In this document: one piece after another, positions 4,142 to 52,092 of the stretch
Numbering within the stretch: the stretch's first letter is position 1
How the letters are laid out: each line of letters opens with the position of its first letter
Program-made: the position numbers and the translations under genes
The notes under the pieces: model-generated
Databases searched by the model: none
What the model saw: the letters and a program-made list of their open reading frames with translations, nothing else
What the model was told of the DNA's origin: nothing
Sequence record: MT612989.1
Length of the DNA stretch: 64,000 nucleotides
Reading direction: 5' to 3' (one strand)

Positions 4142-4149
4142 CATAAATA
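4142..4149 (+). promoter_or_regulatory. late promoter variant CATAAATA for the alt-like gene
   Basis: TAAATA core 32 nt upstream of ATG 4181. Confidence 0.6.
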
Positions 4150-4180
4150 CACATATATTTCTAAAGGGTGAGTCTATAAA

Positions 4181-5809
4181 ATGATTGGATTTCAACAATT
4201 AAATGAAAACATGAGCGCAACGTACGACTATTATCCGGCTCGCTCGACCAAAGAAAACAAATTCTTTGTGATCGACATGAAAGGCGAAGCCAGAGACATC
4301 GTTGTTTCGTTCACAACTAAAACAAAATCAGATATCGGAAATCGCGGTAAACGTTCTTGGTTCTGTACTGTATCAGCAATGCGCGGCAAAAAAGGCGGTG
4401 TTACTATTCGTGAAATGGGAGATGAACAAAAGCTTCAACAAACTATTGTTAAAGTGGTTCAAGATTTCATGATCAAACGTCGTGCGAATGTCGTTTCAAT
4501 GCGTGTGCAGAAACTAGGTACGGGTAAGATGTTCGACTTGCGCGTTAAAACGTTGTTTAAAAAGCTACGTTACGGCTGTGATACAACTAAGATTATTGGC
4601 GTGGGTGGTGAAGAAATTTCGCAAGATTACAGCTTCTTTATTGTAACCAAACCAGGGTATAATGCCGATAAGCTATTCGAAGCATCTGAAGAAACAATTA
4701 ACGATATTGCGTTAAAAATGTCACTCGAAACTGATATTTCAAGCAAGAAAACGATTATCGTAACTGCCGATGCTGCGTATGACGACTATGAAGATGACGT
4801 ACTAGGTAAATGGGTAGAAGAAAACCCCGCTGCACGTGTTCCAAATGATGTTCTTCAAATGCCTCAATATGAAGCGCGTGTAAGTTCGTCTGTTCGTTCT
4901 CAATTGAATGAAAGCAATGAACATGTTCTTGCTAATGCTGCGAAAGGTTTAATTGATATGAGTTTGAATCTTGAAACTGTGGCAGTTTCATTGAATTCAT
5001 ATATCGCCGAATCGAAGAAGCCTCAAAGCGTTCTGAATAGTATCATGGAATCTCGCTCACGTGCTCATGCAAGTCAGTATGAACGTCTTTCTTTGCAACT
5101 TATGCAGGAAGATTCATTTGCGGGTCTATCGTCACTTACACAAGCGGCTATTGCTAGATACTCCGCGACTCGTTTTTCATGGAAGGTGAATGAAGAGTTA
5201 TTACACGGAACTGGTGTTGATAAAGAATCACAGATTGTCTCACGCATCGACCAAGCGTTTTCTGAAGCTGGTATGATTGCTGGTGGAATGACGTTATATC
5301 GTGGCTGTGAAATGTCAAGTAAACATGTGCGCTCTATTCTTGAATCTGGCTCGTTTGTTTCGACTGCGTTTATCTCAACGTCAATCGACCCTCTTGTTGC
5401 TTGTAAGTTCGTTGAATCAAGCTCTAAGAACATCATTGATTCAACTGCTAAGAATAGTAAATCAGATATGCGTTCTCTGCTTGAGTCAGATAAGAAAATG
5501 AATGTTGTATTCATCATAGAAGCGAGCGGCTTGCCTGTTTTAGCTTCAGGTAAACACGGTATGAAAGACTCAAAAGAGATTATCATCAACCGTAATACGA
5601 TGTTTGAAGCTGACGTTGTTCAAATGTCTGAATACGACGCTGTAATTCGATTGAAAATCAAAGAAGATACGAAGCAAGGTGTATTGTCTGCTTTCAAAAA
5701 GCAAGACCGTTTACACGAGCTTTCAGAAGTAGCTAATTTCATGCGTTCTGTTGATGTAGATGTCGATGCAGATAGACTAACAAAAGAGCGTAGTCCTCTA
5801 ACACCATGA
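4181..5809 (+). CDS. alt: Alt-like NAD:protein ADP-ribosyltransferase
   Basis: C-terminal ART motifs TLYRG, FISTS, xxEIIINR; LNE propeptide; late promoter; position next to gene 30 as in T4. Confidence 0.75.
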   Translation: MIGFQQLNENMSATYDYYPARSTKENKFFVIDMKGEARDIVVSFTTKTKSDIGNRGKRSWFCTVSAMRGKKGGVTIREMGDEQKLQQTIVKVVQDFMIKRRANVVSMRVQKLGTGKMFDLRVKTLFKKLRYGCDTTKIIGVGGEEISQDYSFFIVTKPGYNADKLFEASEETINDIALKMSLETDISSKKTIIVTADAAYDDYEDDVLGKWVEENPAARVPNDVLQMPQYEARVSSSVRSQLNESNEHVLANAAKGLIDMSLNLETVAVSLNSYIAESKKPQSVLNSIMESRSRAHASQYERLSLQLMQEDSFAGLSSLTQAAIARYSATRFSWKVNEELLHGTGVDKESQIVSRIDQAFSEAGMIAGGMTLYRGCEMSSKHVRSILESGSFVSTAFISTSIDPLVACKFVESSSKNIIDSTAKNSKSDMRSLLESDKKMNVVFIIEASGLPVLASGKHGMKDSKEIIINRNTMFEADVVQMSEYDAVIRLKIKEDTKQGVLSAFKKQDRLHELSEVANFMRSVDVDVDADRLTKERSPLTP

Positions 5810-5812
5810 TCG

Positions 5813-5838
5813 AAAAAGGGAGCAAATTGCTCCCTTTT
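5813..5838. terminator. bidirectional terminator
   Basis: AAAAAGGGAGCAAATTGCTCCCTTTT between convergent genes. Confidence 0.85.
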
Positions 5839-5841
5839 CTT

Positions 5842-6723
5842 TTATCGAATATCTTCTAGTTCATAACCCCAGATATTACTAAAATCTTCTTCTGATTCGA
5901 CGTAATACAATGTATCTTGCTCACATAAAATCATATCACCTGCATCAAGCGCCGCACCTTTTTCACTAATATCAAATGTACGACCTGTTTTAGTGCGAAC
6001 TGTAATATCACCTAGCATTGACAGCCAAATGTCAGCCGAATCTAAGTTATTGAACTTACCACGCGGAGTTGTTGCTTCAATGTGAATAACATCACTCGAT
6101 TTTCGCTCTATGTAAACTCGACCGTGTGGCAATCCAAATCGAATGAAATCTCCGTCGTTGTCTAACCAGAATAACTTAGCCCAAGTGAATGCGTTAGTAT
6201 TTGGGAAAATAACGTACGTTAGTTCTTCTTCTTTGTGAATCCCGTCGTTATGCAGTCTGCGAACTTTCGGTGGGTTATTGTTCTTCAATGTGAAGCTATT
6301 TCCCATGACGTGAACCGTATAGTCCATCTTGTTCGCGTATCGCTCAGCCATACGTTTGTACAGTCGGAAACGTTTGTCTGCATCATTGCGATCTTCATCT
6401 GAGTACGCACTAAACGCAATCTCATCAGGGTTAATCTCAGACGCTTTTTCAAACGTAGCAGCTAGAATCGTACTTAATACTGTCATGGCATCTTTAGGCG
6501 ATCCTTTTGCAAGCGTGTGCGTCCAATTGCCTGTTTCACGATCTTTTCGTTGGAAAGCTACATATATGCTTACACCGCGTGGCGTTTCGCGATCTTGAAT
6601 CGTTGCTAGGTATTGGGTCCCGCCTACTGTGAAACTAGCTTCATTGTGCATAGCATCCCATCTATATGGCACTGGTCGGTCGAACGCTTCAATTAACGTT
6701 TCTCCATGTTCAAAAATGATCAT
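5842..6723 (-). CDS. late hypothetical protein, candidate internal head protein (AFDRP domain)
   Basis: TATAAATA upstream; LIE|AFDRP N-terminus; N-domain paralogous to the C-domain of 51066..51986. Confidence 0.7.
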   Translation of the reverse strand: MIIFEHGETLIEAFDRPVPYRWDAMHNEASFTVGGTQYLATIQDRETPRGVSIYVAFQRKDRETGNWTHTLAKGSPKDAMTVLSTILAATFEKASEINPDEIAFSAYSDEDRNDADKRFRLYKRMAERYANKMDYTVHVMGNSFTLKNNNPPKVRRLHNDGIHKEEELTYVIFPNTNAFTWAKLFWLDNDGDFIRFGLPHGRVYIERKSSDVIHIEATTPRGKFNNLDSADIWLSMLGDITVRTKTGRTFDISEKGAALDAGDMILCEQDTLYYVESEEDFSNIWGYELEDIR

Positions 6724-6747: not shown

Positions 6748-6755
6748 TATTTATA
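6748..6755 (-). promoter_or_regulatory. late promoter TATAAATA
   Basis: exact consensus 25 nt upstream of ATG 6723. Confidence 0.8.
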
Positions 6756-8613: not shown

Positions 8614-8614
8614 T

Positions 8615-9221: not shown

Positions 9222-9419
9222 TTACATATATTCAGCGCCCGTGAAGACAATGAACATAAAAGTAAAACAAAACACAGCAACAGCTACTAACAATGCAGTT
9301 ACACTAGCTATCATTGAATCGAATTCGTCTTCAATAATCTTATTGACTACATATACTAATGGCGTTGCTGATACGAATACTAGAATAACACCTAGTGTTG
9401 CTAATAAAATTTGAATCAT
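9222..9419 (-). CDS. small membrane protein
   Basis: two hydrophobic helices; GGAG SD before ATG 9419. Confidence 0.65.
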   Translation of the reverse strand: MIQILLATLGVILVFVSATPLVYVVNKIIEDEFDSMIASVTALLVAVAVFCFTFMFIVFTGAEYM

Positions 9420-9445
9420 ATTGTGCTCCTTTATTTGAAGCATCT

Positions 9446-9481
9446 ATGATAATGAAAAGGGCTGCAAATTGCAACCCTTTT
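9446..9481 (-). promoter_or_regulatory. early promoter whose -35 lies inside a terminator hairpin
   Basis: TTGCAA-N17-TATCAT; hairpin AAAAGGGTTGCAATTTGCAGCCCTTTT. Confidence 0.65.
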
Positions 9482-9483
9482 GT

Positions 9484-9993
9484 TTATTTCATCCACTGTT
9501 TGCGCTTTTTAGAGCGTTTCCACCCGCGCTGTGGAGATTTGTAAGACGATAGACCATCCCAATCTAGAAGACAGCGAACTGTATGAGCACGTTTTTTGCG
9601 AACTACTTTACCGTATTCGGCTTCAATCTCGTCTTCACAGAACTTGTTATGATGCATTTCAGACATCAAACCGTTACCGCGTCGAGCATGAATCCAGTTC
9701 TTGTAGCAACCAGTATGTGGCACTGGCGTGTAACGAAACACGTAGTTACCTTTGTAACGTGCTAGACATTCACCATTTCGAATTAGGTCAATCATACGTC
9801 TTGCGCTAGTTGACATGTAAAACCCAACACGTTCTGGGCTCCAGAAGCTCTGATAACGAACGTATGTTCTAGCCCACTCAGGTACCCATTCACCATCCCA
9901 TAATTCGAAAACATGATGAGGTCCCATTTCGCGTGAGTTGTATAGTGGTAGATCTTTTTCTTTTACGCCTTTGTATTTTTTGACTTCAGTCAT
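9484..9993 (-). CDS. hypothetical protein (basic, Trp-rich)
   Basis: 169 aa ORF with GGAG SD. Confidence 0.7.
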   Translation of the reverse strand: MTEVKKYKGVKEKDLPLYNSREMGPHHVFELWDGEWVPEWARTYVRYQSFWSPERVGFYMSTSARRMIDLIRNGECLARYKGNYVFRYTPVPHTGCYKNWIHARRGNGLMSEMHHNKFCEDEIEAEYGKVVRKKRAHTVRCLLDWDGLSSYKSPQRGWKRSKKRKQWMK

Positions 9994-10017: not shown

Positions 10018-10053
10018 TTAGTGAAACAACTCCTTACGATGAAATTTCTTCAT
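10018..10053 (-). CDS. candidate 11-aa leader peptide MKKFHRKELFH
   Basis: TAATG overlap with the upstream stop; ends within a hairpin covering the next SD. Confidence 0.35.
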   Translation of the reverse strand: MKKFHRKELFH

Positions 10054-10298
10054 TATTCAATTACCTCATACGCTTCGTTAAGGAAGTCATCAACATCATC
10101 TACGTTGATTTTGTCTTCATCTATTGCTAGTAAATCACATAGCAATTCTAAAATATCATGTTTACGAATTGTCCCATGACTGAATACAGTCTGACCAATC
10201 CATTCGGCTACCGACCAGTAATAGTCTTCAAAATCACCATCGCATTCGTAATTTGCTAGGTTGTACTGCTCTAGAAGCATATTCAAATCGTGCGTCAT
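10053..10298 (-). CDS. hypothetical acidic protein
   Basis: 81 aa, AAGG SD. Confidence 0.65.
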   Translation of the reverse strand: MTHDLNMLLEQYNLANYECDGDFEDYYWSVAEWIGQTVFSHGTIRKHDILELLCDLLAIDEDKINVDDVDDFLNEAYEVIE

Positions 10299-11909: not shown

Positions 11910-12176
11910 TCAGAAGTAGTCAGCGTACCTATCTAAGATTCGCTTCGGGATTTTTAAGTTTACAAATCTCTTACCTTTCAAACCACCATCATATGCGATT
12001 TCTGCAATCAGATCTTCGTACATGTCTGGTTCAAGTTCGTCGATAATGTCCTTGTACTCTTGTGGAAGCTGTCTCTTCAGCTTCTTAACGAGCGCGTGAA
12101 TCTCATTTATCGTGAGATCACGCAACTCTTGGTATGTCATTTCGTTTAGGGATATTTCAATAAAAGACTTTAGCAT
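11910..12176 (-). CDS. hypothetical protein with possible gp21 propeptide (MLKSFIEISLNE)
   Basis: GGAGG SD; ATTAAATA at 12195-12202 upstream. Confidence 0.65.
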   Translation of the reverse strand: MLKSFIEISLNEMTYQELRDLTINEIHALVKKLKRQLPQEYKDIIDELEPDMYEDLIAEIAYDGGLKGKRFVNLKIPKRILDRYADYF

Positions 12177-12193
12177 AATGCCACCTCCGTCTC

Positions 12194-12415
12194 TTATTTA
12201 ATCCCTAGTAGCTTACCAATTACGGTCATTGGTAGATAAAAAATGACATAAAACAAAATGTAAATCGCAATCTGTACGCCGAAACCTAGTGATAGCATAG
12301 CGACGTAAAGCTGCACGAGGTAATAATCTACCTCGGCTGTCGCTGCTTCGTTCAGTTCGCCGCGAAACTCGCGACACATATCTTCTAGAATTCGAATGAA
12401 ATTGCTCATTACCAC
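12194..12415 (-). CDS. small membrane protein
   Basis: hydrophobic C-terminal half. Confidence 0.6.
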   Translation of the reverse strand: MVMSNFIRILEDMCREFRGELNEAATAEVDYYLVQLYVAMLSLGFGVQIAIYILFYVIFYLPMTVIGKLLGIK

Positions 12416-20438: not shown

Positions 20439-20642
20439 TTAAAAATCATCGTCCCATACTGCTTGCACGGGAGTACATTGCATCAACTGACCGTCAATTT
20501 CATAAGTCTCTGATTGCGGTTGAGTACTGTAAGATGTAGGTTGTTCAGCCCCAAACAACGTACCAGCAGCTACCGACGCTAGAATCCCTAGAATCGCAAT
20601 CAAAACAATCAATTCGATCAGAGTAAAACCTTTAGATTTCAT
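20439..20642 (-). CDS. small protein with prepilin-type N-terminal cleavage/methylation motif
   Basis: MKSKG|FTLIELIVLIAILGILASVA: class III signal peptide with Gly-1, Phe+1, Glu+5. Confidence 0.85.
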   Translation of the reverse strand: MKSKGFTLIELIVLIAILGILASVAAGTLFGAEQPTSYSTQPQSETYEIDGQLMQCTPVQAVWDDDF

Positions 20643-31066: not shown

Positions 31067-31312
31067 TCATTCCTCTTCTAACAATTTGTCGATGCGAGAT
31101 AAGACGCTCACACCCTCGCCTAGACATTCGCCATTGTAAAACGCTATTGGGTGGGCAATATAACCATCATCTTCAGCGATTTTCTGAAGTTCTTTATAGC
31201 GTTCACGAGGAACAAATGCGTCATAAAAAATATGTTTAATGTTTCTATCATTTAGCGAGTCGCACAACTTGCGACAAGCTAAACAATATTTTGACCCGAT
31301 AATCTCTACCAA
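31067..31312 (-). CDS. glutaredoxin-like protein
   Basis: CLAC motif; HP..FYNGE..G. Confidence 0.7.
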   Translation of the reverse strand: MVEIIGSKYCLACRKLCDSLNDRNIKHIFYDAFVPRERYKELQKIAEDDGYIAHPIAFYNGECLGEGVSVLSRIDKLLEEE

Positions 31313-37105: not shown

Positions 37106-37355
37106 TTATCGCCTCAGTCTCAATTTTGTCTTTCAACGTCTGATTAATCAGATACGGGAAGCGACTAATGTCGTAATCGTATTGCTCAATGAAGAACAGA
37201 CACGCTTCAAGATAGGTCATGGCGGGACAGCTATTATAAATCTCTTCAATTTCTAGAGAGATTTGCTGTCTAAGACTGCCTTTAATAGGCGGAACTAAAT
37301 CACCAAGCTCTTCTTTTAAAACGTAGTTGTCTTTATTCATCATCTGCATCGTCAA
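37047..37355 (-). CDS. 33: late transcription coactivator gp33
   Basis: IE......TYLEA...FIE; position between dsbA and 59. Confidence 0.8.
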   Translation of the reverse strand: MTMQMMNKDNYVLKEELGDLVPPIKGSLRQQISLEIEEIYNSCPAMTYLEACLFFIEQYDYDISRFPYLINQTLKDKIETEAINEKTIRSRFGSASDLGQWV

Positions 37356-37614
37356 AAAGCTTCTCGTATAGATTGTCTACCTTTTCATACTTCGCCTGTT
37401 CTTCTTGGCGGTTTTGTTTGTGATACATCTTCACAACTTTGTTGAAATCGGCAGGTTTGATTTCGAACTCTTCTTTTGCGCGATTCGCAATGTCTTTCAT
37501 TAGATCGCGTTCAGAATCAATGCGCAACATGGAAGCAGACGCTTCTTTAACCATGTTAACTACTTCTTGCTTATCTTGCGGAGTAGAGATTGTTTCGTAT
37601 TCAAGAATGTCCAT
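37333..37614 (-). CDS. dsbA: dsDNA-binding protein DsbA (T4 type)
   Basis: MKDIANRAKEEFEI....FNKVVKMYHKQ. Confidence 0.9.
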   Translation of the reverse strand: MDILEYETISTPQDKQEVVNMVKEASASMLRIDSERDLMKDIANRAKEEFEIKPADFNKVVKMYHKQNRQEEQAKYEKVDNLYEKLFDDADDE

Positions 37615-37660
37615 CGTTACCTCAATATGTTTTGTTCAATGTCGTTGTTTCGTGCTGCTC

Positions 37661-37690
37661 ATTATACAGCAGCACATGTTGTTCTAAACA
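37661..37690 (-). promoter_or_regulatory. TGTTTA-class promoter for dsbA-33-59-32
   Basis: GTTTAG-N17-TATAAT. Confidence 0.65.
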
Positions 37691-37696
37691 ATTTTT

Positions 37697-38629
37697 TTAG
37701 AATTCGCTCATGCTTTCAATAAGCTTATCTAACTTCTTAGAAGCAAAATACATCATGATTTTACTTCTAGGCGCTGGCTTCTGCGCTTCAAACTGTTCGA
37801 TTATGCTATCACTGATATTCTTAGGAATAAACGCAAAATCTAACAATTTTCTGTTTTCTTCATAACGAGCAAATTGCTCTTCAGTTAAGAGCTTTTTAAG
37901 CTCATCTGGCGTTGATGTCATTAGCGTGCGCAACTCTTCTTTGCGAACAGATGGTGCACGACGACCATCGCCATGTGTGTAGTGATCATTCGGCGCTTTC
38001 AACGGTGCAATACCGTCTTTTTTATCGCCTTTTATGCATTTAAACATGATGTCCATTTCTGGTGAACCATGCTTCGGCTTGACCCATTTCTTCTGAATCG
38101 GAGACCATTGACGTACAAGCTTGCTTGTGTGTAACTGAGTAAAGTCACCATCTGAAGAAGTAATCAAAACTGGAACGTTTTTACTCACGTAATAATTAGT
38201 CAAAACACCAATATGGTCATCGGCTTCAACGCCTTCAATGTCCATTACGTAATACGGCATGTTTTCTTTGATTTCTTCTTTAATCTGCGCCATTGCATTG
38301 AAAATCGTTTCGAAATCCCAGCCAGAGTCATCACGCTGCTCACTACGTTTGTATTTGTAGTACCAAGCTTCTTTCTTGCGCCAATAACCGCCTTTACCGT
38401 TATCAATACACAAGATAATACGCGGGTATTTGAGTTTGTTCTTTAGCACGTTACTACGTAGCGTGTTAAGAACGATATGACGAATCAAATCAACTGTTAG
38501 TAGATCAGTCGGTTTGTATGTTGCCATGATTGTACTCAAGACAATCTGACTGAAGTCAACGAGATTAACACCCGCTGGCATACCATCAAACGATTTTGTC
38601 TTTCGCTTGAAGAACCCCTCTAAACTCAT
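37697..38629 (-). CDS. rnh: RNase H (5'-3' exonuclease/flap family)
   Basis: LVDFSQI, YWRKK..YYK.KR, EADDHIG, SSDGDFTQL, KGDKKDGI. Confidence 0.95.
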   Translation of the reverse strand: MSLEGFFKRKTKSFDGMPAGVNLVDFSQIVLSTIMATYKPTDLLTVDLIRHIVLNTLRSNVLKNKLKYPRIILCIDNGKGGYWRKKEAWYYKYKRSEQRDDSGWDFETIFNAMAQIKEEIKENMPYYVMDIEGVEADDHIGVLTNYYVSKNVPVLITSSDGDFTQLHTSKLVRQWSPIQKKWVKPKHGSPEMDIMFKCIKGDKKDGIAPLKAPNDHYTHGDGRRAPSVRKEELRTLMTSTPDELKKLLTEEQFARYEENRKLLDFAFIPKNISDSIIEQFEAQKPAPRSKIMMYFASKKLDKLIESMSEF

Positions 38630-38707: not shown

Positions 38708-41700
38708 ATGTCAGAATTCCGCAGAGCATTTCGTGCGTCAGGTCTTGATGCAAGTGGTCAGAATGTCATTAACGTAGCAGACCCACGAGCAAATGAATTG
38801 TTCGACGGTATTAACCAAGGCTACTTTATTGAAGAGAACACTGTTCAAGAGTATGACCCAACACGAGATCACTATAAAGTAGACTTTATCGTTGAGTTCA
38901 ATCAACGTCTATACAAAAACATTACCGAAATCAATGCACCTGAACCTTTTGACTCGCAGAAGTGGCAGAAAATGCGTACCGACCCTGAATGGGAAGATAC
39001 TGATTCATCGGTAGGCGCAAACGTCGGTGACTTCTTGTTGTTAACAGCAAGCTCGGCAATCACTATTACACTGCCTGAAACACCATTAACAGGTGACACA
39101 GTTACAATCAAAGACGGTAAAGGCGTTCTTACAACTTACCCTTGTACGATTGCAGCAGCGGGCGGCTTGACGATTCAACATTACGGCATTGACGGTTCAA
39201 TTGAGTCTAAACCGAGTATTTCATTCAATACCCCTAACAGCACTATATTCTTAGTGTACAACGGTATTGCATGGACATATCAGATCAATCAAGAGTTATA
39301 CAATACGTATATTGACGACAGTCACCCAACTCAACAGGGTGGGTACTTATCAACTGGTGGTTATTTCACTAACGTTGGCGAGACAGTCACATATGACGGT
39401 TCAGTTAAGAAAATTGCAATTTCTGTACCACTGAACCCGAACGTGGGCGATACAATTCATCTTAAAGATGTTGCGTATCTTGAGAATCAAACGTCGATTC
39501 AAATCGGTGTGAACCCGACTGCTACGGGTCAGGTTATTCAAGACCCTATTTCAGGCGAACGTAGTTCTGTTATCAGTCTTGATACTATCGGCGGCGCTGA
39601 TATCACATTTATCGATGATAACGGTACTGGCGTATGGGTAATCACAATCGCGAACAACCCGCATTTATGGAACTATGTCGGTGATTCAAGCGCGGTTGAA
39701 TTGAAGCCTCGTTCTCGTTACGCTATCGAAATCGCAGATGCTGTTCCTGCAATGACGATCACACTACCAGAAAAACCAGCAGATGGTGACTGGATTGAGA
39801 TCTCACACAACAAAACAGCTCATAAGAAAGTAACGATTCAAGTTCACCCGAATTTCGGTGATGATGACCCAGGTCACGGCCCCGATGAATACAAAGTATT
39901 CTTGGACTTTGAAACATATCGTTATCAAAAATACCGTCATTACGTTGATTTCGTTCCATTCTTCGTTGAATCATTCGAAATTAGTGATTATGACAGCGGT
40001 TATTCACTAGTTCTATACTACGACGCGAGTCGTAAAGTATGGTCGTTCGGTAACATCGCGACTCGTATCGATATCGCTGATGAACTATACCGTAAACGCC
40101 CGGGTATCGTGCCATTAGCTGACCCAACGGAAGCTCTAGCACACGGGATTGAATATGCGCACCCTGAAGATGCAGCAGACCCTTGGGCTGATCAAAACCC
40201 ACTGAAAGACCACGTAATCACGGTAGAGACGCTTGACGCTCGTCGTGCAGGTGAACAGCAAGTTGGTATGGCTCGTGTTGCTACTCTTGGAACTGATGAA
40301 GCTCTTGAAGAATCGCGTTCTGGTACGTTTGTTCGTTACCCAGATACAAACTTCAGACATGATCTGTTCATAACACCACGTAGTTTGAATGCGCGTACAG
40401 CAACTGAAACACGTCGCGGTGTAGTTGAAATCGCAACTCAAAACGAGACGCGAAGCACAACTAACGATGTTCAAGTTCTAACACCGATGAAATTCCACGC
40501 TGCACAAGCTGAAGAAGATCTAACAGGTGTTGCAAAACTAGTCGAAGCGTCGAACAACATCAATGCTGGTGGTATTGTTACATCAACAGCGAATATGCGT
40601 TCAGACCGTTCAGTAAATGGTCTTGACAATACAGTATATGATAAAACTGATCATCTGCGTATCGTAACGCCAAAAATGCTTGATGAGTATCGTGCTACAG
40701 AGAATCAACCTGGTACATTATGGGTTGCTAAGAGCAGTGAACTTCGCATCAACGACTCAACAGTTGATAACGCGATCATCACGCCTAAGAAATTAGCAGC
40801 GTGGAAAGCAAGCTCAACGGTTCGTGGTATTGCTCGTTCTGCTACACAGTCTGAAGCAAATGCAACAACAGGAACTGGTGAATCGTGGACAACAGTCTTC
40901 ATCACACCAGAAACGTTGAATAGCAGAACAGCAACTGAATCACGTCGTGGTGTTGCGGAAATCGCAACTCAAACTGAAGTTGACTCAGGGACAGACGATA
41001 CTCGTATTGTTTCACCACTTAAACTGAAGACATGGCTTGATCGTGATCATTTCGTGACAGCAGGAACAGATGGTCTATCGCATACTGGTACAGTGTGGGG
41101 CGACGTTACATTCAGCATCGCGTCAGCGACTGAAACACAACGTGGTACACTACAAGTTGCGACTCAAGTAGAAGCGAATGCTCAAACTGGTGCGCTTGAT
41201 GATGTAATCATCACACCACAGAAGTTAAATGCGCGTCGTGCTACAGAAACGCAAACCGGTATCGTGCGTCTTGCGACTCAAGCTGAAGTCGAAGCAGCGA
41301 CAGCTAGTAATGAAATTGTTGTTACTCCGAGTGATTTGCTACACTGGACTCGTTACTCTGACAGCTCACGTGCAAATGAAAGTCGTTATGGTAACGTACA
41401 AATCGCAACACCAGCAGAAACATTTGTTGGTAACAGTACAGACGGTTCAACACAAGCGTATACGTCGTACTTGCGTGTTCCATATGCAGTTTCACCTTAC
41501 GGGTTGCACTATGCATTGCGTAACTACTTGCCACTAAACGCTAAAGCTGATGACTCAGAATTACTAGATGGCTTGAACAGTACACAATTTGCACGTCGTG
41601 ACATCGACCAAACAATCAATGGCACGTATACGTTTAGTGGCGAATTCGTGCAAACGAAAGGTGGCGGTTATTTCTTAGTTGCAAACCCAACGAACGACGC

Positions 41701-42415
41701 AGCGAGTGTAAAACTCGACTGGTTTAATGACGAACCTCGCATTCGTGTGGGCGGTAGTGGTAACGGGTCTTCTTCACCATTCTCAATCGCAGGGACAGGT
41801 GACACAACTCGATGGCAAGTAAACTCAACTGGTTATACGACTCAACCAGGTGGGGCATCGTTCGGTGATACAATATATGAAAATGAAGCGACTGCTAACG
41901 TTGATACAACATACGGGTCTTATTCGAGCCCGTCAAGCGGTTCACTTCGTCAGAAGTACTTGGGTATTAACAACGTAGCTAAAGCGTCTGAGAAGTGGGT
42001 TACAGCGCGTACAGTAACGTTCACCGGCGACTTGTCTGGTAACTTTACGTTAGATGGTAGCGGAAACGTTACTACAAACATTCAAGTTAATGATTACAGT
42101 CACGCTCACTCAGGTGAGAACATCACAACAGGTACAATTAACAATGATCGTCTGCGCAAATCAAGCCGCACAAATCAAGGTATTGTACAAGTAACAAGTG
42201 ACGTGCGTACAGCAGACCCAGTGAATGCTTCAGACCCACACCAAGCTCTATCGGCTGGTGCTGGTAAGACTCTATCTGAGCGTATCGACTTGTTCACGCC
42301 AGACGGTGGTACAGGTGAGAGCGTTAAATACAGAGACTACATTCAAGTTGGTTCTGTAAGAATGTCAACTAATAATCAAGGCGTGTTGGAGTTTACGTAC
42401 GGACACGCTATATAA
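38708..42415 (+). CDS. 34: long tail fibre proximal subunit gp34
   Basis: FRASGLDA.G..VINVA N-terminus; multiple ATETRRG..EIATQ.E repeats; AGGAG SD before ATG 38708. Confidence 0.93.
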   Translation: MSEFRRAFRASGLDASGQNVINVADPRANELFDGINQGYFIEENTVQEYDPTRDHYKVDFIVEFNQRLYKNITEINAPEPFDSQKWQKMRTDPEWEDTDSSVGANVGDFLLLTASSAITITLPETPLTGDTVTIKDGKGVLTTYPCTIAAAGGLTIQHYGIDGSIESKPSISFNTPNSTIFLVYNGIAWTYQINQELYNTYIDDSHPTQQGGYLSTGGYFTNVGETVTYDGSVKKIAISVPLNPNVGDTIHLKDVAYLENQTSIQIGVNPTATGQVIQDPISGERSSVISLDTIGGADITFIDDNGTGVWVITIANNPHLWNYVGDSSAVELKPRSRYAIEIADAVPAMTITLPEKPADGDWIEISHNKTAHKKVTIQVHPNFGDDDPGHGPDEYKVFLDFETYRYQKYRHYVDFVPFFVESFEISDYDSGYSLVLYYDASRKVWSFGNIATRIDIADELYRKRPGIVPLADPTEALAHGIEYAHPEDAADPWADQNPLKDHVITVETLDARRAGEQQVGMARVATLGTDEALEESRSGTFVRYPDTNFRHDLFITPRSLNARTATETRRGVVEIATQNETRSTTNDVQVLTPMKFHAAQAEEDLTGVAKLVEASNNINAGGIVTSTANMRSDRSVNGLDNTVYDKTDHLRIVTPKMLDEYRATENQPGTLWVAKSSELRINDSTVDNAIITPKKLAAWKASSTVRGIARSATQSEANATTGTGESWTTVFITPETLNSRTATESRRGVAEIATQTEVDSGTDDTRIVSPLKLKTWLDRDHFVTAGTDGLSHTGTVWGDVTFSIASATETQRGTLQVATQVEANAQTGALDDVIITPQKLNARRATETQTGIVRLATQAEVEAATASNEIVVTPSDLLHWTRYSDSSRANESRYGNVQIATPAETFVGNSTDGSTQAYTSYLRVPYAVSPYGLHYALRNYLPLNAKADDSELLDGLNSTQFARRDIDQTINGTYTFSGEFVQTKGGGYFLVANPTNDAASVKLDWFNDEPRIRVGGSGNGSSSPFSIAGTGDTTRWQVNSTGYTTQPGGASFGDTIYENEATANVDTTYGSYSSPSSGSLRQKYLGINNVAKASEKWVTARTVTFTGDLSGNFTLDGSGNVTTNIQVNDYSHAHSGENITTGTINNDRLRKSSRTNQGIVQVTSDVRTADPVNASDPHQALSAGAGKTLSERIDLFTPDGGTGESVKYRDYIQVGSVRMSTNNQGVLEFTYGHAI

Positions 42416-48152: not shown

Positions 48153-48178
48153 TCTAAATATGTATAACTGTATTTATA
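48153..48178. promoter_or_regulatory. divergent late promoters
   Basis: TCTAAATA on + (48153-48160) and TATAAATA on - (48171-48178). Confidence 0.7.
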
Positions 48179-48191: not shown

Positions 48192-48401
48192 ATGACAAGA
48201 GACGAAATGTTTTACAAGATGAAAGATGGTTGCTTTAAGTTTGAGCATAAAGGCAAGAAATATCACGCGACTTTATGCAAGCATTATCTACCACATCTTG
48301 ATTGCAATCGAGAAGAACAACGTAAAAATGAAAACGGTGCAGATAATGAACTTACATTTTTCGATTTAAATCGAAATGTGTGGGTAACAATTGAATGCTA
48401 A
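48192..48401 (+). CDS. hypothetical protein
   Basis: GAGG SD; ATL..LP....FFD.....W pattern. Confidence 0.7.
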   Translation: MTRDEMFYKMKDGCFKFEHKGKKYHATLCKHYLPHLDCNREEQRKNENGADNELTFFDLNRNVWVTIEC

Positions 48402-48410
48402 GGTAAAACT

Positions 48411-48923
48411 ATGATTAAAGAATATCTAAAGAAACAAACCAAGCGCGTAGTTGCAGAATTTGCAAAAGAGTACTACGACATCGAACTTGATAAATCGCTG
48501 ACTAAAAGCAAGATGATCGACGAGTTATTCACACACGAGCTACGCGAGGTTAAAGAACTACCACTAGAATGCTCTGTAATCGAGTCTGAGACGCGCTGTG
48601 AATCAGTCGATGAATCGGACGCGATTGTAGTCAAAGAGCTTTCAGACGACGTTAAGAAAGAATTAGAAGGTGTTTCTGCTAATGCCCCTTTAGGTGATGA
48701 AAACGTAACATTAGTAATCAAGGACGAATTCAAGCCTAAATGGATGCCTACTTATCGCCGTGGTGATGAGCTATATCAGCCAGTTGCGCATGATGTGATT
48801 CATGATTGGAATATAGGTCGACGCGACTCTCACGAATTGAAGACGATTGAATATTGGGTTAAGCGAAATGGTCATCTTTTAGTTCACGACCGTCTTTCGA
48901 ACAGCTTCATTTATCTGAGGTAA
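48411..48923 (+). CDS. inh: Inh-like minor head protein / prohead protease inhibitor, copy 1
   Basis: K..VAEFAKEYYDIELDKSLTKSKMIDE; position near uvsW as in T4. Confidence 0.7.
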   Translation: MIKEYLKKQTKRVVAEFAKEYYDIELDKSLTKSKMIDELFTHELREVKELPLECSVIESETRCESVDESDAIVVKELSDDVKKELEGVSANAPLGDENVTLVIKDEFKPKWMPTYRRGDELYQPVAHDVIHDWNIGRRDSHELKTIEYWVKRNGHLLVHDRLSNSFIYLR

Positions 48924-48926
48924 TTT

Positions 48927-49415
48927 ATGTTACGATTTAATGAATATGAAAACACGCTTTACGGTATCGAACTGAGTTTATCACTTGAAGAGGGGTGGGG
49001 TAATCATAACCTAGCCAAACTAATCCCTGAGCCGAAAATCGATGAGTTACTAGAAACGAAACCGAAGCACCCGTGGAAGATTGCTGCGAATGCTGCTCAA
49101 TATCAGAACTTGCTCTTCAATATTGATTCAAGTCGAATCGTATTCAAGAACACTGTATATCAAGTTGCGTATCTAGGTAACTTATACCCGCCAGAAGAAG
49201 TCGGTAAACCTGAAGGTGGGTATAAGTTCGCAGTTAAAAAGTCGATTTATCACTCACACCCTAGTAGTGAATTTTATTCAGGGAAAAACCCAAAAGACCC
49301 TAAGTTAAATGATACTATTTCATTGGTCTGGTGGTTTCAGAGAGGTACAATCGTATTCGACTTATGGAAGCATAGCGAATATGATGAAAAACTTGAGAGA
49401 TGGCGAAGAAAGTAG
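48927..49415 (+). CDS. hypothetical protein, possible RelE/YafQ/HigB-fold RNase with propeptide
   Basis: C-terminal YHSH..ISLVWW..IVFDLWKHSEYD; N-terminal LEE|GW. Confidence 0.45.
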   Translation: MLRFNEYENTLYGIELSLSLEEGWGNHNLAKLIPEPKIDELLETKPKHPWKIAANAAQYQNLLFNIDSSRIVFKNTVYQVAYLGNLYPPEEVGKPEGGYKFAVKKSIYHSHPSSEFYSGKNPKDPKLNDTISLVWWFQRGTIVFDLWKHSEYDEKLERWRRK

Positions 49416-49445
49416 TTGACAACTCAAATGTTTTTGCTTATTATA
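49416..49445 (+). promoter_or_regulatory. early promoter
   Basis: TTGACA then TATTAT with a 17-nt spacer. Confidence 0.7.
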
Positions 49446-49481: not shown

Positions 49482-49748
49482 ATGAACAAACTCGAAACAG
49501 CTTTTGCTGAACATAACGCTGTACAAGTTCCTGTTGAAAAACCTAGAGAGTTTTATACACCGTGTGGCGTTAAATTCACAACTGAACCGATGTTTAATAC
49601 TGCAACTGGTAAATATGACAGTATTTTATATTCATTTGATACTGGTGAAAAAATAATTGTTGACGATGAACTTGACAGCTTTCATGAAGCATATCAAGAA
49701 TTCACTGGCAAGACATTCATGGCTATTCAAGAGCCAATCGTAATTTAA
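49482..49748 (+). CDS. hypothetical early protein
   Basis: GAGAG SD. Confidence 0.7.
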   Translation: MNKLETAFAEHNAVQVPVEKPREFYTPCGVKFTTEPMFNTATGKYDSILYSFDTGEKIIVDDELDSFHEAYQEFTGKTFMAIQEPIVI

Positions 49749-49763
49749 TGAGAGAAATATATT

Positions 49764-50390
49764 ATGAAAGATTTAGACATCGTACGTAAAGCACTTGCAA
49801 CTAACGAGTCACCTAAGCGTCGTAACTTCCGCAAAGCAGTAATTCAATTGCTTGAAAAGCGTGACTTGACAGTTGCAGAGATTGTATATTCACTTAATGG
49901 TGGTGAATATGATGAGCGTCTTCGTCGTCGTGTTCAAGCTAACGTTCAGAATGCACCTGAAATCATGGTCACTCGATTCGAAACGTTCGGTCACACCGAG
50001 ATTCCTGTATACACGTTGAAAGGTGACGGTAAATTAGAAGTACTCATGCCAAAACGCGAGTCGCCACGTAAGCCTGTATTAGGGATGGAATCTCTATTGA
50101 CACGTGTTCTCAATCTTGGTCTGGGGCGTGCAGTAGCTGTTGCGGGTCCACAAGCGGTTGATGCATTTAAAAAGCTTGAACCGAAACAGCAAGCTCGTTA
50201 TATTTCAACGCTTGCATTGTCAGATCACGCACGTTCTATTCTTACGCTTGTACATAGCGCGAACTTGTCAAAAGAGCAGTTGAAAGAACTGAACGTTAAA
50301 CAACTTGTTCGTCAGAATGCATCGTATGTTGTAGCGAAACTACACGGTTCAACTGCGTTTTTCGACAATATCAAATCAGTATACGGTTAA
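49764..50390 (+). CDS. hypothetical early protein, possible N-terminal winged HTH
   Basis: RKAVIQLLEKRDLTVAEIVYSL..RRRVQANV..VYTL. Confidence 0.6.
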   Translation: MKDLDIVRKALATNESPKRRNFRKAVIQLLEKRDLTVAEIVYSLNGGEYDERLRRRVQANVQNAPEIMVTRFETFGHTEIPVYTLKGDGKLEVLMPKRESPRKPVLGMESLLTRVLNLGLGRAVAVAGPQAVDAFKKLEPKQQARYISTLALSDHARSILTLVHSANLSKEQLKELNVKQLVRQNASYVVAKLHGSTAFFDNIKSVYG

Positions 50391-50402
50391 ATTAACCAAT
50401 TT

Positions 50403-50431: not shown

Positions 50432-50439
50432 CGTTTGCG

Positions 50440-50447
50440 TCTAAATA
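50440..50447 (+). promoter_or_regulatory. late promoter variant TCTAAATA
   Basis: 23 nt upstream of ATG 50470. Confidence 0.7.
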
Positions 50448-50469
50448 ATAGTAAACAAAGGGGTTAACA

Positions 50470-51063
50470 ATGATAGAATTTTTAACAGAAATGGACAAAG
50501 CTAAACAAACCGGTAGATGGGCTCAATTTAAAGCAGCAACATCGGGTTCGAAAGGTGAAGTTAAAAAGCGTATGCAGCGCAAAGGTGGCTTCTGGGGTGT
50601 GTTTGCAGGTTTGATCGCGAGTGCGACAGCATCGGGTGAACTTAGAAAGCACAATAAGTCACTAGAAGACCATAAGCTAAGAATGGAGCGTGCAGCAGTG
50701 AACACAATTCACAGTCTGAATGTTCTTAAAGACGTAATCGAGCTTGAACGTCCTCGTGACGAAGTAATGAAAGCTGCAAAGCGTTTAAAGCTTGATAACA
50801 TGGAAATGAAGAAATACGCAACCGAAATGATTCGTGTCGTAGATGAATACAAGCGTGTTCATGACGAAGATAAGAAGGCAGGTGCGTTTCGTTTTAATGT
50901 GAAAGAATACGACCGTCATGATTTTCGTGAGATTTACCATCACTTGAACATGATTGAAGATAGCACATTTTACGTCGATAAAGCAGCGTCATCGGCTATG
51001 ACTGGCGATACTGAATACGCAATTCGTATGATTCGCAATATTACAAACGCAGCAACGAGGTAA
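50470..51063 (+). CDS. late hypothetical protein, candidate internal head protein
   Basis: MIEFLTE| propeptide; Gly-rich hydrophobic segment; helical. Confidence 0.7.
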   Translation: MIEFLTEMDKAKQTGRWAQFKAATSGSKGEVKKRMQRKGGFWGVFAGLIASATASGELRKHNKSLEDHKLRMERAAVNTIHSLNVLKDVIELERPRDEVMKAAKRLKLDNMEMKKYATEMIRVVDEYKRVHDEDKKAGAFRFNVKEYDRHDFREIYHHLNMIEDSTFYVDKAASSAMTGDTEYAIRMIRNITNAATR

Positions 51064-51065
51064 TA

Positions 51066-51986
51066 ATGAGCATAATTTTTGAACGCGCTACATTGAAAAC
51101 TCGAAAAGGTAGTGCAGTAAAACGCAGCAAGTGGGGCGTGGGTAAAGACATTGGCGGTTCATTGTATGTTCACATTGACTATATCCCAGATGAGTTCAAG
51201 CAAATGGTTGCTGATGCTCGTACTCAAGTATCAATTGCAAACTCACAATTTACTCCGAATGTAGTACGAATTGACTACAAGAAAGGTGGAGTTGCTTTCT
51301 ACGATTCAGTTGAATTTGATACTGTACAAGAACCAGCCGCGGGTATGATGATTACTTACAGAGACGGTGTTGTTTCTAAACCACGTCAAGTAAACCAAAT
51401 ATGGCATCACAAATGGTTGTGGGTTGGTGATGATTATAGAGGGTTTGATACTTCTCAGTCATATGACCGCTCGGCTCAGTGGCTAGATCATGACGATATC
51501 CCATTTGCCAAGATCGGTAATAAGAAGACATGGCGTGAATGGCTGTCTTCGGTTAACTTGACTGAGGCATTTGACCGACCATCTAAAATACACTGGGTTG
51601 AGAAGAGAATTCACAGTTGGGGTGGTACGTTTACGGTAAACGGGGACGAATACGCGATTGCAATACAGTATCAAGAACAAAACGATGCATGGGAACTTGT
51701 GTTCTTAGGTATGAACAGTTCGGGTGATTATACTTACAGCGCAACAGGTCGAGGCAATATGTATGGTGTGTTTGCGACAGTAATGAGCGGTATGCGTGAA
51801 TTTATAGACGAGCGAGAGCCAGAAACAATTTATTTCAGTGCAGAGCGAGATATAAAAAACGACAGTGATTCGAGAATAAAACTATACAATCGTTTAGTAA
51901 AACGATATGCTGATACATTACCGAATTACACATATAAAACGGTCGAAGGGAAAGTCTCGACTAAAACATATTTCATTAGAAAATAA
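51066..51986 (+). CDS. two-domain late protein: PT-associated-like domain plus AFDRP domain
   Basis: VGK..LYVH, FDT..EP, IWHHK..V..DY; internal LTE|AFDRP at residues 165-172. Confidence 0.7.
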   Translation: MSIIFERATLKTRKGSAVKRSKWGVGKDIGGSLYVHIDYIPDEFKQMVADARTQVSIANSQFTPNVVRIDYKKGGVAFYDSVEFDTVQEPAAGMMITYRDGVVSKPRQVNQIWHHKWLWVGDDYRGFDTSQSYDRSAQWLDHDDIPFAKIGNKKTWREWLSSVNLTEAFDRPSKIHWVEKRIHSWGGTFTVNGDEYAIAIQYQEQNDAWELVFLGMNSSGDYTYSATGRGNMYGVFATVMSGMREFIDEREPETIYFSAERDIKNDSDSRIKLYNRLVKRYADTLPNYTYKTVEGKVSTKTYFIRK

Positions 51987-51993
51987 GAGAGCA

Positions 51994-52092
51994 ATGAAAA
52001 CATTTCAAGATTTTCATGAATTCAGCAGATTTCGTACCTGCTTGATAATTAAAAAGCGCATTTTTTGCGCTTTTTTTGTATCTATTGGTTGA
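51994..52092 (+). pseudogene. remnant or mini-gene beginning with a T4-type capsid targeting sequence (MKTFQDFHE)
   Basis: frame reads through the terminator; shifted frame ends SADFVPA-TGA-TAA just before the terminator. Confidence 0.35.
52051..52077 (+). terminator. intrinsic terminator
   Basis: AAAAAGCGCA-TTTT-TGCGCTTTTTT. Confidence 0.8.

What the first reader, a model, noticed from the sequence alone, without database searches (positions are those of the whole stretch)
4142..52092. Genome-wide set of late genes with (I/L)-x-E propeptides: a putative injected-cargo arsenal
Seen: N-termini MIGFQQLNE| (4181), MIIFEHGETLIE| (6723-), MLKSFIEISLNE| (12176-), MLRFNEYE..LSLEE| (48927), MIEFLTE| (50470), MSIIFE| (51066) and MKTFQDFHE| (51994). 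Each lies downstream of an nnTAAATA late-promoter core and has an early Phe plus an x-x-E site. Established: T4 internal proteins and Alt are targeted by a short N-terminal sequence (MKTYQEFIAE type) removed by gp21. Inference: this phage injects a varied toolkit (ART, RNase-like, PT-associated and membrane-active proteins) for host takeover and anti-defence.
Basis: partly seen in the sequence, partly recalled or inferred. Interest (0 to 1): 0.8.

Follow-up and report, generated by a model that had tools for sequence, protein, structure and literature searches.

The report
Phage head-cargo proteins with cleavable leaders
A T4-like Vibrio phage encodes several late proteins whose short conserved N-terminal leaders end in the cut site of the head-maturation protease, so they are probably packed into the capsid as in phage T4; this extends a known mechanism to new proteins and is untested by proteomics.

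Summary
The window is Vibrio phage vB_ValM_R11Z (KVP40-like, Schizotequatrovirus), record positions 62001-126000. All seven quoted N-termini are present.

The bare (I/L)-x-E motif is not specific: 22 of 89 annotated genes have it in their first 12 residues. Only four candidates have an nnTAAATA core directly upstream. Two more are operon mates of such genes.

The seventh (51994) is a 32-codon remnant that runs through a terminator. It is stopped after four codons in KVP40 and is not a gene.

Comparison with relatives supports the core idea for the Alt homologue, 5842-6723(-), 48927, 50470 and 51066, and less firmly for 11910-12176(-). In each case:
- the leader stays invariant down to 36-47% identity;
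- the linker after it varies or is deleted;
- an [LI]xE always abuts the conserved body.

The phage's gp21 protease is 49% identical to T4's, and the gp23 maturation site is conserved.

Two candidates carry a DUF6934 (GNAT-like) domain. In 56 of 56 internal and 43 of 44 N-terminal copies in metagenomic relatives, that domain is preceded by Glu. A PA5oct homologue was detected in virions by mass spectrometry.

The functional labels other than ART are unsupported. Packaging and injection are inferred, not shown. Verdict: new members of the known T4 capsid-targeting and processing system.

The parts
4142..4149 (+). Late-promoter-like core CATAAATA, 31 nt before the Alt start
   Evidence: Conserved as CATAAATA 31-33 nt upstream in nt-1, D484, ValKK3 and 1.081.O.
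4181..5809 (+). Alt-like ADP-ribosyltransferase, 542 aa. The predicted leader is residues 1-9 and ends in L-N-E.
   Evidence: phrog_802 E=1.2e-88; PF03496 24.2 bits against a cut-off of 23.4. M1 I2 G3 L7 E9 are invariant in 11 clusters down to 36% identity. AF2 residues 1-12 have pLDDT below 50. The gene lies near the DNA ligase gene, as alt does in T4.
5814..5838 (.). Hairpin terminator between the convergent Alt and 5842-6723 genes. It is also the right-hand boundary of the exchanged cassette.
5842..6723 (-). 293-aa two-domain protein. Leader residues 1-12 hold I-F-E at 5 and L-I-E at 12. Then comes a DUF6934-like (GNAT-like) domain at about 13-148 and a second domain at about 160-293.
   Evidence: Leader MI[IV]FE is invariant in five lineages at 42-54% identity. 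The linker is variable or deleted, and [LI]xE always abuts the conserved body. E12 is one of nine columns conserved in at least 90% of 31 relatives. AF2 pLDDT is 89, with residues 1-11 below 50. The body is exchanged between phages that are 96-99% identical on either side.
6748..6755 (-). Perfect late-promoter core TATAAATA, 24 nt before the 6723 start, just after a hairpin
   Evidence: Invariant at 22-24 nt in five lineages.
11910..12176 (-). 88-aa protein with an invariant seven-residue start and a variable linker ending in L-N-E at residue 12. A weaker candidate.
   Evidence: The linker length and sequence differ in nt-1 and D484 while the first seven residues and the body are conserved. 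In D484 the P3 residue is Phe, not I/L. It lies inside a long minus-strand cluster of early-type genes.
12193..12200 (-). ATTAAATA core 18 nt before the 12176 start. It overlaps the last codons and stop of the upstream gene.
   Evidence: Its conservation may be due to coding, so promoter status is uncertain.
48153..48160 (+). TCTAAATA core heading the unit 48207-49415
   Evidence: Also present in KVP40 and D484.
48411..48923 (+). Second Inh-like (prohead protease inhibitor family) gene, in the same unit as 48927
   Evidence: phrog_8608 E=8e-69. Paralogue of 53749-54246. Its N-terminal I-K-E is not conserved in relatives.
48927..49415 (+). 162-aa protein with F4 and Y7, the positions that matter for targeting in the T4 leader, and a conserved [LI]-[ED]-E at 20-22
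   Evidence: T4 IPI likewise has its site at residue 19. Positions 4 and 7 are reported as the targeting determinants in PMC9026906.
50440..50447 (+). TCTAAATA core 22 nt before 50470, after a hairpin
   Evidence: Kept at 22-26 nt in KVP40, nt-1, D484 and D479.
50470..51063 (+). 197-aa basic protein (pI 9.5) with a seven-residue leader ending in L-T-E. That is the only [LI]xE in the protein.
   Evidence: M1 I2 E3 F4 T6 E7 are invariant in 10 sequences down to 38% identity, and no column is invariant from 8 to 16. The family is found only in KVP40-like Vibrio phages. In D479 it lies just downstream of gp22 and gp23.
51066..51986 (+). 306-aa protein made of a leader ending I-F-E at 6, a basic domain, an internal L-T-E junction at 165-167, and a DUF6934-like domain at 168-300
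   Evidence: In D479 the homologue carries the 50470-type leader instead and lacks the C-terminal domain.
51994..52092 (+). Vestigial T4-type leader. A 32-codon ORF that runs through the terminator at 52051-52075. Not a gene.
59810..60451 (-). gp21 prohead protease, the enzyme expected to cut the leaders
   Evidence: 49% identical to T4 gp21, E=1e-62.
57314..58858 (-). gp23 major capsid protein. Its L-N-E | A at residue 62 aligns with the T4 maturation site L-T-E | A.
58929..59777 (-). gp22 scaffold, rich in [LI]xE sites. Used as a positive control for substrates that are degraded.
   Evidence: 14 sites against 4.9 expected.
53749..54246 (-). Inh (prohead protease inhibitor) with AATAAATA 30 nt upstream

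Best explanation
What it is: five proteins of this KVP40-like phage, and perhaps a sixth, are made as precursors with a short N-terminal leader. The five are Alt and the products of 5842-6723(-), 48927, 50470 and 51066. The possible sixth is 11910-12176(-).

How it most likely works:
1. The genes are transcribed late. This is shown only as conserved promoter motifs.
2. The leader, with an aromatic residue at position 4 or 5, docks the precursor onto the scaffolding core of the assembling prohead. This is inferred from T4.
3. The gp21-type protease cuts after the [LI]xE at the end of the leader. In 51066 it would also cut at an internal L-T-E in front of the DUF6934-like domain. This is inferred from a conserved site, a conserved protease and a disordered leader.
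4. The mature proteins stay in the DNA-filled head and leave it with the DNA at infection. This is inferred by analogy with T4 Alt and the T4 internal proteins.

The cargo bodies evolve fast and are exchanged as cassettes between a conserved promoter-plus-leader and a terminator, as at the T4 internal-protein loci.
For: - The leaders are much more conserved than what follows them, and [LI]xE always sits exactly at the leader-body junction, even across indels and leader swaps.
- Paralogues of the 5842-6723 domain elsewhere in the genome carry a different, T4-like leader but the same L-x-E | A/S-F/L junction.
- In 62 distant relatives, Glu precedes the domain in 43 of 44 N-terminal and 56 of 56 internal copies. 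P3 is L or I in 40 and 38 of these.
- AF2 places leader residues 1-11 or 1-12 outside the fold.
- gp21 is 49% identical to T4's, and the gp23 maturation site is conserved.
- T4 leaders read from the T4 record resemble the leaders found here. The T4 mechanism is documented in PMC9026906 and PMC5694885.
- PA5oct gp135 is a virion protein by ESI-MS/MS, a homologue of the domain, and starts with a five-residue L-F-E leader.
- Late-promoter cores are conserved upstream.
- Control genes with an N-terminal [LI]xE lose it in relatives.
- The cassette exchange is bounded by the leader and the terminator.
Against: - I found no virion proteomics, N-terminal mapping or transcript data for any KVP40-like phage.
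- The bare motif is common: 22 of 89 CDS.
- The enrichment outside the window alone is only p=0.068.
- The conserved L-x-E before the DUF6934 domain could be part of the domain rather than a cut site.
- Leaders of the 4181, 6723 and 50470 type lack the second aromatic residue at position 7 that matters in T4.
- 11910-12176 sits in an early-type cluster. Its promoter motif overlaps coding sequence, and D484 has Phe at P3.
- Depletion of internal sites in the candidates is not statistically significant.
Confidence: 0.6

Rival explanations
1. The proteins do enter the prohead and are cut by gp21, but they are assembly components: extra core or scaffold proteins, or protease regulators, of the larger KVP40-type head. 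They would be degraded or expelled during maturation rather than ejected into the host. This applies most to 48927, 50470 and 51066 in the head-gene neighbourhood.
For: - These genes lie between uvsW and gp23, next to two Inh-like genes.
- In D479 the 50470 and 51066 homologues follow gp22 and gp23 directly on the same strand.
- T4 core proteins gp67, gp68, gp21 and gp22 also start with an [LI]xE within 10 residues.
- The 50470 family is confined to this phage group and well conserved, unlike fast-evolving anti-defence cargo.
Against: - Degraded core proteins are rich in internal sites: gp22 14 against 4.9 expected, gp68 5 against 1.7, gp21 8 against 2.5. 50470 has only the leader site and 51066 only three.
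- 50470 is basic (pI 9.5), like DNA-associated internal proteins.
Confidence: 0.2
2. There is no processing. The N-terminal similarities are chance plus ordinary constraints, such as translation-initiation sequence preferences or an N-terminal structural element of the fold, and nnTAAATA is too loose to mean anything.
For: - [LI]xE within 12 residues occurs in 25% of genes.
- Several promoter cores deviate from TATAAATA.
- The outside-window test gives p=0.068.
- The seventh case is an artefact.
Against: - The junction is conserved through indels, leader swaps and tandem repeats.
- The leaders are predicted to be disordered.
- TAAATA is depleted overall, yet 16 of 39 copies sit in the roughly 4% of positions just upstream of starts, including known late genes.
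- The control genes behave differently.
Confidence: 0.12
3. The conserved L-x-E before every DUF6934-like domain is a structural or functional part of that GNAT-like domain, for example its first strand or helix, and not a protease site. Under this reading 5842-6723 and 51066 are ordinary cytoplasmic enzymes.
For: - The motif is conserved in all copies, including copies in phages whose protease specificity is unknown.
- AF2 puts a short helix at residues 10-13 of 5842-6723.
Against: - Residues 1-11 have pLDDT below 50.
- The preceding linkers are hydrophilic and variable.
- P1' is A or S, as at the T4 sites read.
- A perfect late promoter is conserved upstream.
- The PA5oct homologue is in virions.
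Confidence: 0.08

Closest known systems
T4 internal proteins IPI, IPII and IPIII and their capsid targeting sequence
   Same: A short N-terminal leader with an aromatic residue at position 4 that ends in [LI]xE followed by Ala or Ser. The bodies are diverse and otherwise unrelated, and cassettes are exchanged behind a conserved leader (PMC4122927). The protease is conserved.
   Different: No body homology was found. The local domain-profile search did not hit the T4 internal proteins, and I made no direct comparison of the candidates with them. Most window leaders (4181, 6723, 50470, 51066) lack the position-7 aromatic residue and have I or L at position 2 or 3 instead of Lys-Thr. True T4-type leaders of this phage lie outside the window. 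Several members are large (293-542 aa) and not basic.
T4 Alt (packaged ADP-ribosyltransferase, cut at ITE-6 and LTE-619)
   Same: 4181-5809 has the ART domain, sits near the ligase gene, has a late core upstream and a conserved N-terminal L-x-E at residue 9.
   Different: It is 140 residues shorter and its N-terminal region is not alignable to T4 by sequence. A C-terminal site (L-H-E at 513) is present in R11Z and nt-1 but not in D484, so C-terminal processing is uncertain.
Propeptide-bearing ejection and inner-body proteins of giant phages (phiKZ, SPN3US)
   Same: Many head proteins are targeted by N-terminal propeptides and trimmed by a T4-related prohead protease at x-x-E motifs. Paralogous families share identical leaders (PMC5694885).
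   Different: Those proteases prefer S/A/G at P3 and the propeptides are often longer than 100 residues. Here P3 is L/I(/V) and the leaders are 5-22 residues, as in T4.
Pseudomonas phage PA5oct gp135
   Same: Homologue of the 5842-6723 N-domain (27% identity; local profile E=6.5e-26). It has a five-residue leader ending L-F-E and a TAAATA motif upstream, and it was detected in virions by ESI-MS/MS.
   Different: It is a single-domain 141-aa protein in a phage family that is not T4-like. Its N-terminal processing has not been reported.

Membership tests
T4-type CTS-bearing packaged head proteins | N-terminal leader of about 6-20 residues ending in the gp21 site [LI]-x-E | tested here: met
   Met for 4181 (9), 6723 (5 and 12), 12176 (12), 48927 (22), 50470 (7) and 51066 (6). 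It is conserved in relatives. Not met for 51994 (F-H-E).
T4-type CTS-bearing packaged head proteins | Targeting determinants at leader positions 4 and 7, aromatic in T4 IPIII (PMC9026906) | tested here: inconclusive
   Position 4 or 5 is Phe in all. Position 7 is aromatic only in 48927 and in the remnant 51994. Outside the window, five genes have F4 and F7.
T4-type CTS-bearing packaged head proteins | A gp21-type prohead protease with the same specificity in the same genome | tested here: met
   gp21 is 49% identical to T4's. The gp23 site L-N-E | A aligns with T4's L-T-E | A. gp22, gp21 and gp68 are enriched in [LI]xE.
T4-type CTS-bearing packaged head proteins | Expression when proheads assemble (late promoter) | tested here: inconclusive
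   Conserved nnTAAATA cores lie directly upstream of four and at the head of the operon for two. No transcript data are available.
T4-type CTS-bearing packaged head proteins | Physical presence of the mature protein in the head, with the leader removed | not testable with these tools
   No proteome of a KVP40-like virion was found. The only indirect evidence is PA5oct gp135 by ESI-MS/MS.
T4-type CTS-bearing packaged head proteins | Ejection into the host with the DNA | not testable with these tools
   Analogy with T4 only.
Alt-like RNA polymerase ADP-ribosyltransferase (phrog_802 / PF03496) | ART catalytic domain | tested here: met
   PF03496 24.2 bits against a cut-off of 23.4; phrog_802 E=1.2e-88.
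Alt-like RNA polymerase ADP-ribosyltransferase (phrog_802 / PF03496) | Short N-terminal propeptide ending [LI]xE (T4: ITE-6) | tested here: met
   L-N-E at residue 9, with L7 and E9 invariant in 11 clusters. This is sequence evidence only.
DUF6934 (PF22028) | Score at or above Pfam's gathering cut-off of 27 bits | tested here: not met
   51066 scores 24.2 bits and 5842-6723 has no hit. However, 20 of 31 relatives match, long relatives score 38-67 bits, and a profile built from those relatives hits both window proteins at E=1e-43 and 3e-36. I call the window domains 'DUF6934-like'.
GNAT acetyltransferase fold | Significant structural match and acetyl-CoA binding motif | tested here: inconclusive
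   The best PDB Foldseek hits are GNAT-type domains, but at E about 0.05 and none at or below 1e-3. Some relatives carry separate true GNAT domains. I did not examine cofactor motifs.
Degraded prohead core proteins (gp22, gp67, gp68 type) | Many internal [LI]xE sites | tested here: not met
   50470 has 1 site, 51066 has 3 and 5842-6723 has 4, near or below expectation. gp22 has 14 against 4.9 expected.

The most novel reading that the evidence does not exclude
The DUF6934-like (GNAT-like) domain may be a widespread head-internal module of T4-like and jumbo phages that is always delivered behind a protease site.

- Single copies carry a T4-type leader.
- Proteins of up to about 1,900 residues carry two to five copies, each preceded by [LIV]-x-E | A/S. 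They would then be polyproteins cut into separate units inside the prohead.
- By predicted-structure comparison, viral proteins matching the model of 5842-6723 are annotated with ADP-ribosyltransferase, zeta-toxin-like, deaminase and ParB/Srx domains. Among the sequence relatives, Pfam finds GNAT and amidoligase domains.
- The N-terminal region of Alt may be such a module too.

This would define a general adaptor-plus-cleavage architecture for packaged phage effectors.
Probability: 0.3. Interest if true: 0.75.

Novelty: new member of a known kind. Interest (0 to 1): 0.5.

Why it matters
Proteins packed in a phage head act before any phage gene is expressed, so they are prime candidates for host takeover and for countering bacterial defences. 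In T4 only a handful are known.

A sequence rule of conserved leader, [LI]xE junction and late promoter, checked by comparison with relatives, would allow such cargo to be predicted in the large marine and aquaculture Vibrio phages and in metagenomes. It would also give a first functional context to DUF6934, to its tandem-repeat giant proteins, and to the unexplained N-terminal half of Alt.

Tried and rejected
- A protein search with only the N-domain of 5842-6723 found nothing, because of the length filter. The full HMMER scan replaced it.
- PDB sequence searches for four candidates gave nothing.
- The KVP40 genome paper is not held. No paper links capsid targeting to KVP40-like phages, and I found no virion proteome of this group.
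- Profile-profile comparison of the Alt family with the 5842-6723 family gave only 6.9% probability. It did put the two L-x-E junctions in register.
  - The local profile hit on Alt is marginal (E=0.015).
  - Foldseek against BFVD did link the 5842-6723 model to Alt-like proteins (E from 5e-4 to 3.5e-3).
  - The order of secondary-structure elements agrees.
  - I leave this homology open.
- Depletion of internal cut sites in the candidates is not significant.
- 'Membrane-active' is rejected. No candidate has a hydrophobic stretch above 1.3 on a 19-residue Kyte-Doolittle window.
- 'RNase-like' and 'PT-associated' have no support in Pfam or PHROGs.
- A conserved C-terminal cut site in Alt is present in R11Z and nt-1 but not in D484.
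- The last fold search was not used. A search with the Alt model would return mostly other Alt proteins.


Full report
**Identity of the window.** The window is 100% identical to Vibrio phage vB_ValM_R11Z (MT612989.1), positions 62001-126000. This is a KVP40-like member of the Straboviridae, genus Schizotequatrovirus. Besides the candidates, the window holds the head-morphogenesis genes:
- gp20, gp67, gp68, gp21, gp22 and gp23 at 57314-62677(-);
- gp24 at 1236-2135(-);
- inh at 53749-54246(-).

These known protease substrates can therefore serve as internal controls.

Every T4 letter used afterwards was read from NC_000866, an accession shown in PMC2993671 and fetched.

**The observation.** Three points need correcting.
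- The plain motif is common. [LI]xE ending by residue 12 occurs in 22 of 89 annotated CDS, including obvious early enzymes.
- Only four candidates have an nnTAAATA core within 31 nt upstream: 4181, 6723(-), 12176(-) and 50470. 48927 and 51066 are downstream members of units headed by such cores at 48153-48160 and 50440-50447. 51994 has none.
- 51994-52092 is not a gene. It is unannotated and its 32 codons run through the terminator hairpin at 52051-52075. In KVP40 the same ATG is followed by a stop after four codons. In nt-1 and D484 the spacer holds only the terminator and a sigma-70-like promoter. Its first nine residues are nevertheless the closest match in the window to the T4 internal-protein leaders read. 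I read it as the stump of a lost cassette.

**Is the promoter motif real?** TAAATA occurs 39 times on both strands, against about 82 expected from base composition. Sixteen copies lie within 60 nt upstream of a same-strand start, a zone that makes up about 4% of strand positions. They precede gp19, gp22, gp23, gp24, a tail fibre gene, uvsW and inh. The variant cores TCTAAATA and CATAAATA therefore look functional in this phage.

**Association test.** I tested whether the combination 'Phe at 4 or 5 plus [LI]xE by residue 12' goes with an upstream TAAATA.

| Scope | Motif and TAAATA | No motif but TAAATA | Fisher p |
|---|---|---|---|
| Window | 4 of 6 | 11 of 84 | 0.0065 |
| Whole record (385 own gene calls, made piece by piece) | 6 of 11 | 36 of 374 | 3.6e-4 |
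| Outside the window only | 2 of 5 | 25 of 290 | 0.068 |

The in-window test is post hoc.

**Comparative evidence: 5842-6723(-).** This is the strongest line of evidence. I compared five lineages at 42-54% identity (R11Z, nt-1, D484, ValKK3 and 1.081.O).
- The first five residues (M-I-I/V-F-E) and a perfect TATAAATA 22-24 nt upstream are invariant.
- The next six to seven residues differ in all lineages and are deleted in D484.
- In every case an [LI]xE stands directly before the conserved body.
- In a 31-sequence alignment reaching 19% identity, that Glu is one of only nine columns conserved in at least 90% of sequences.

**Comparative evidence: the other candidates.**
- 50470: residues 1-7 are invariant in ten sequences down to 38% identity, apart from one L/I change. 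No column from 8 to 16 is invariant.
- 51066: the leader ends in I-F-E in three lineages. In D479 it is replaced by the 50470-type leader, again ending exactly before the conserved basic body.
- 11910-12176(-): seven invariant residues are followed by a linker of 3, 5 or 6 residues ending in Glu before the conserved body. D484 has Phe at P3, and the 'promoter' overlaps the stop of the upstream gene.
- 48927: F4, Y7 and an [LI]-[ED]-E at 20-22 are kept. T4 IPI likewise has its site at 19.
- Alt: M1 I2 G3 L7 E9 are invariant in 11 clusters down to 36% identity.
- Controls: 15322, 12194 and the Inh-like 48411 also have an N-terminal [LI]xE, but they lose it in relatives.

**The protease.** gp21 is 49% identical to T4 gp21. 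The T4 gp23 maturation site L-T-E | A aligns with L-N-E | A here. The scaffold and core proteins are enriched in [LI]xE: gp22 has 14 against 4.9 expected, gp21 has 8 against 2.5, and gp68 has 5 against 1.7. By contrast 50470 has only its leader site.

The literature held here states the following for T4:
- All internal head proteins reach the core through a 10-20-residue leader.
- Leader positions 4 and 7 matter for targeting, and positions 8 and 10 for processing.
- Alt is cut at ITE-6 and LTE-619 (PMC9026906, PMC5694885).

**A shared domain.** The N-domain of 5842-6723 recurs in several places:
- in the C-terminal half of 51066, where it is preceded by an internal L-T-E;
- in two tandem genes outside the window (record 30786-32583), which carry a different, T4-like leader but the same L-x-E | A/S-F/L junction;
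- in a 483-aa late protein with a T4-type leader.

A full HMMER scan found 62 representative relatives. The domain sits either at the extreme N-terminus or in arrays of up to five copies. Glu precedes it in 43 of 44 N-terminal and 56 of 56 internal copies, with L or I at P3 in 40 and 38 of these. Many N-terminal leaders of these relatives resemble the T4 leaders.

The long relatives pass Pfam's cut-off for DUF6934, but the two window proteins do not. One relative lies on a 210-kb marine T4-like scaffold.

**Structure of 5842-6723.** AF2 gives a confident model (pLDDT 89) in which residues 1-11 are below 50, that is, outside the fold. PDB matches are weak and of GNAT type, with E about 0.05. 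BFVD matches with E at or below 1e-3 include phage proteins annotated with zeta-toxin domains, and Alt-like ADP-ribosyltransferases of T4-like phages. Matches to proteins annotated with ParB/Srx and deaminase domains are weaker, at E=1.2e-3 and 6.3e-3.

Whether the Alt N-terminal region is homologous remains open:
- hhalign gives 6.9% probability, though with the junctions in register;
- the local profile gives E=0.015;
- the order of secondary-structure elements is the same.

**Link to experiment.** PA5oct gp135 matches the 5842-6723 N-domain at 27% identity. It starts with a five-residue leader ending L-F-E, has a TAAATA motif upstream, and is annotated 'structural protein, ESI-MS/MS'.

**Cassette behaviour.** R11Z and ValKK3 are 96-99% identical up to about codon 17 of 5842-6723 and again from the terminator at 5814-5838 onward. 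The body between these points is only about 47% identical at the protein level. This mirrors the shuffling reported for the T4 internal-protein locus (PMC4122927).

**Functions.** Only the ADP-ribosyltransferase is supported. No candidate has a transmembrane-grade hydrophobic segment. There are no RNase or phosphorothioation-related hits and no sequence relatives in the PDB.

**Verdict.** The underlying idea survives a comparative test for five proteins, and weakly for a sixth. These are best filed as new members of the known T4 capsid-targeting and gp21-processing system. One leader variant differs from the classical one, and a previously uncharacterised domain family is attached to it. Packaging, cleavage and ejection remain predictions. 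The main rival is that some are assembly-core proteins rather than ejected cargo.

Noticed in passing
window 20439-20642 (-): A 67-aa ORF with a type IV prepilin-type N-terminal methylation motif (PF07963, 30.3 bits against a cut-off of 21.2). Its L-I-E is part of that signal, not a gp21 site. A pilin-like protein in a T4-like phage is unusual.
   Followed up: partly
window 5839-6671 compared with L013 (ValKK3): The body of 5842-6723 is a sharply bounded allelic replacement between phages that are 96-99% identical on both sides. The boundaries are the leader-coding start of the gene and the terminator.
   Followed up: yes
MT612989.1 record 60605-61252(-), 40346-41797(-), 9294-9545(-), 167693-167935(+), 234584-234877(-), 37242-38297(+) (loci L003, L004, L005, L007): Outside the window there are five genes whose leaders have F4 and F7, four of them ending in x-x-E by residue 10. 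They closely resemble the T4 IPII and IPIII leader. Three have late cores, and one lies among the tRNA genes as ipI does in T4. One further gene has the same first five residues as 5842-6723 and its own late core.
   Followed up: partly
proteins P0005-P0062; L021: Metagenomic giant proteins of up to 1,913 aa carry two to five DUF6934 copies. Each copy is preceded by [LIV]-x-E | A/S (Glu in 56 of 56). Some also carry GNAT or amidoligase domains. They may be polyproteins.
   Followed up: partly
window 49416-49444 (+), before 49482-50390: A near-consensus sigma-70 promoter (TTGACA, 17 nt, TATTAT) heads two genes that lie between the two late units. This suggests an early cassette inserted in the late cluster.
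   Followed up: no
window 48411-48923 (+) and 53749-54246 (-): There are two diverged paralogues of the prohead-protease inhibitor Inh (25% identity), conserved in KVP40, nt-1 and D484.
   Followed up: partly
window 10053-10298 (-): An 81-aa protein almost identical in nt-1 and D484, with [AT]TTAAATA 31-34 nt upstream and L-L-E at residue 10. It is too conserved throughout to judge whether residues 1-10 form a leader.
   Followed up: partly
window 26201-27046 (-): A 281-aa gene of unknown function with TCTAAATA 33 nt upstream, inside a cluster of replication and nucleotide-metabolism genes. It has no Pfam hit.
   Followed up: no
window 4181-4600 (Alt residues about 13-130): The Alt N-terminal domain has the same order of strands and helices as the DUF6934-like domain. 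Alt-like proteins of T4-like phages are Foldseek hits of the 5842-6723 model. Sequence-profile support is weak.
   Followed up: partly
window 24894-25373 (-) and 34167-34883 (-): The record calls the 159-aa ORF 24894-25373 'major capsid protein', but it has no Pfam hit, so the label looks like an annotation error. A ClpP-like protease subunit gene sits between frd and uvsX.
   Followed up: no
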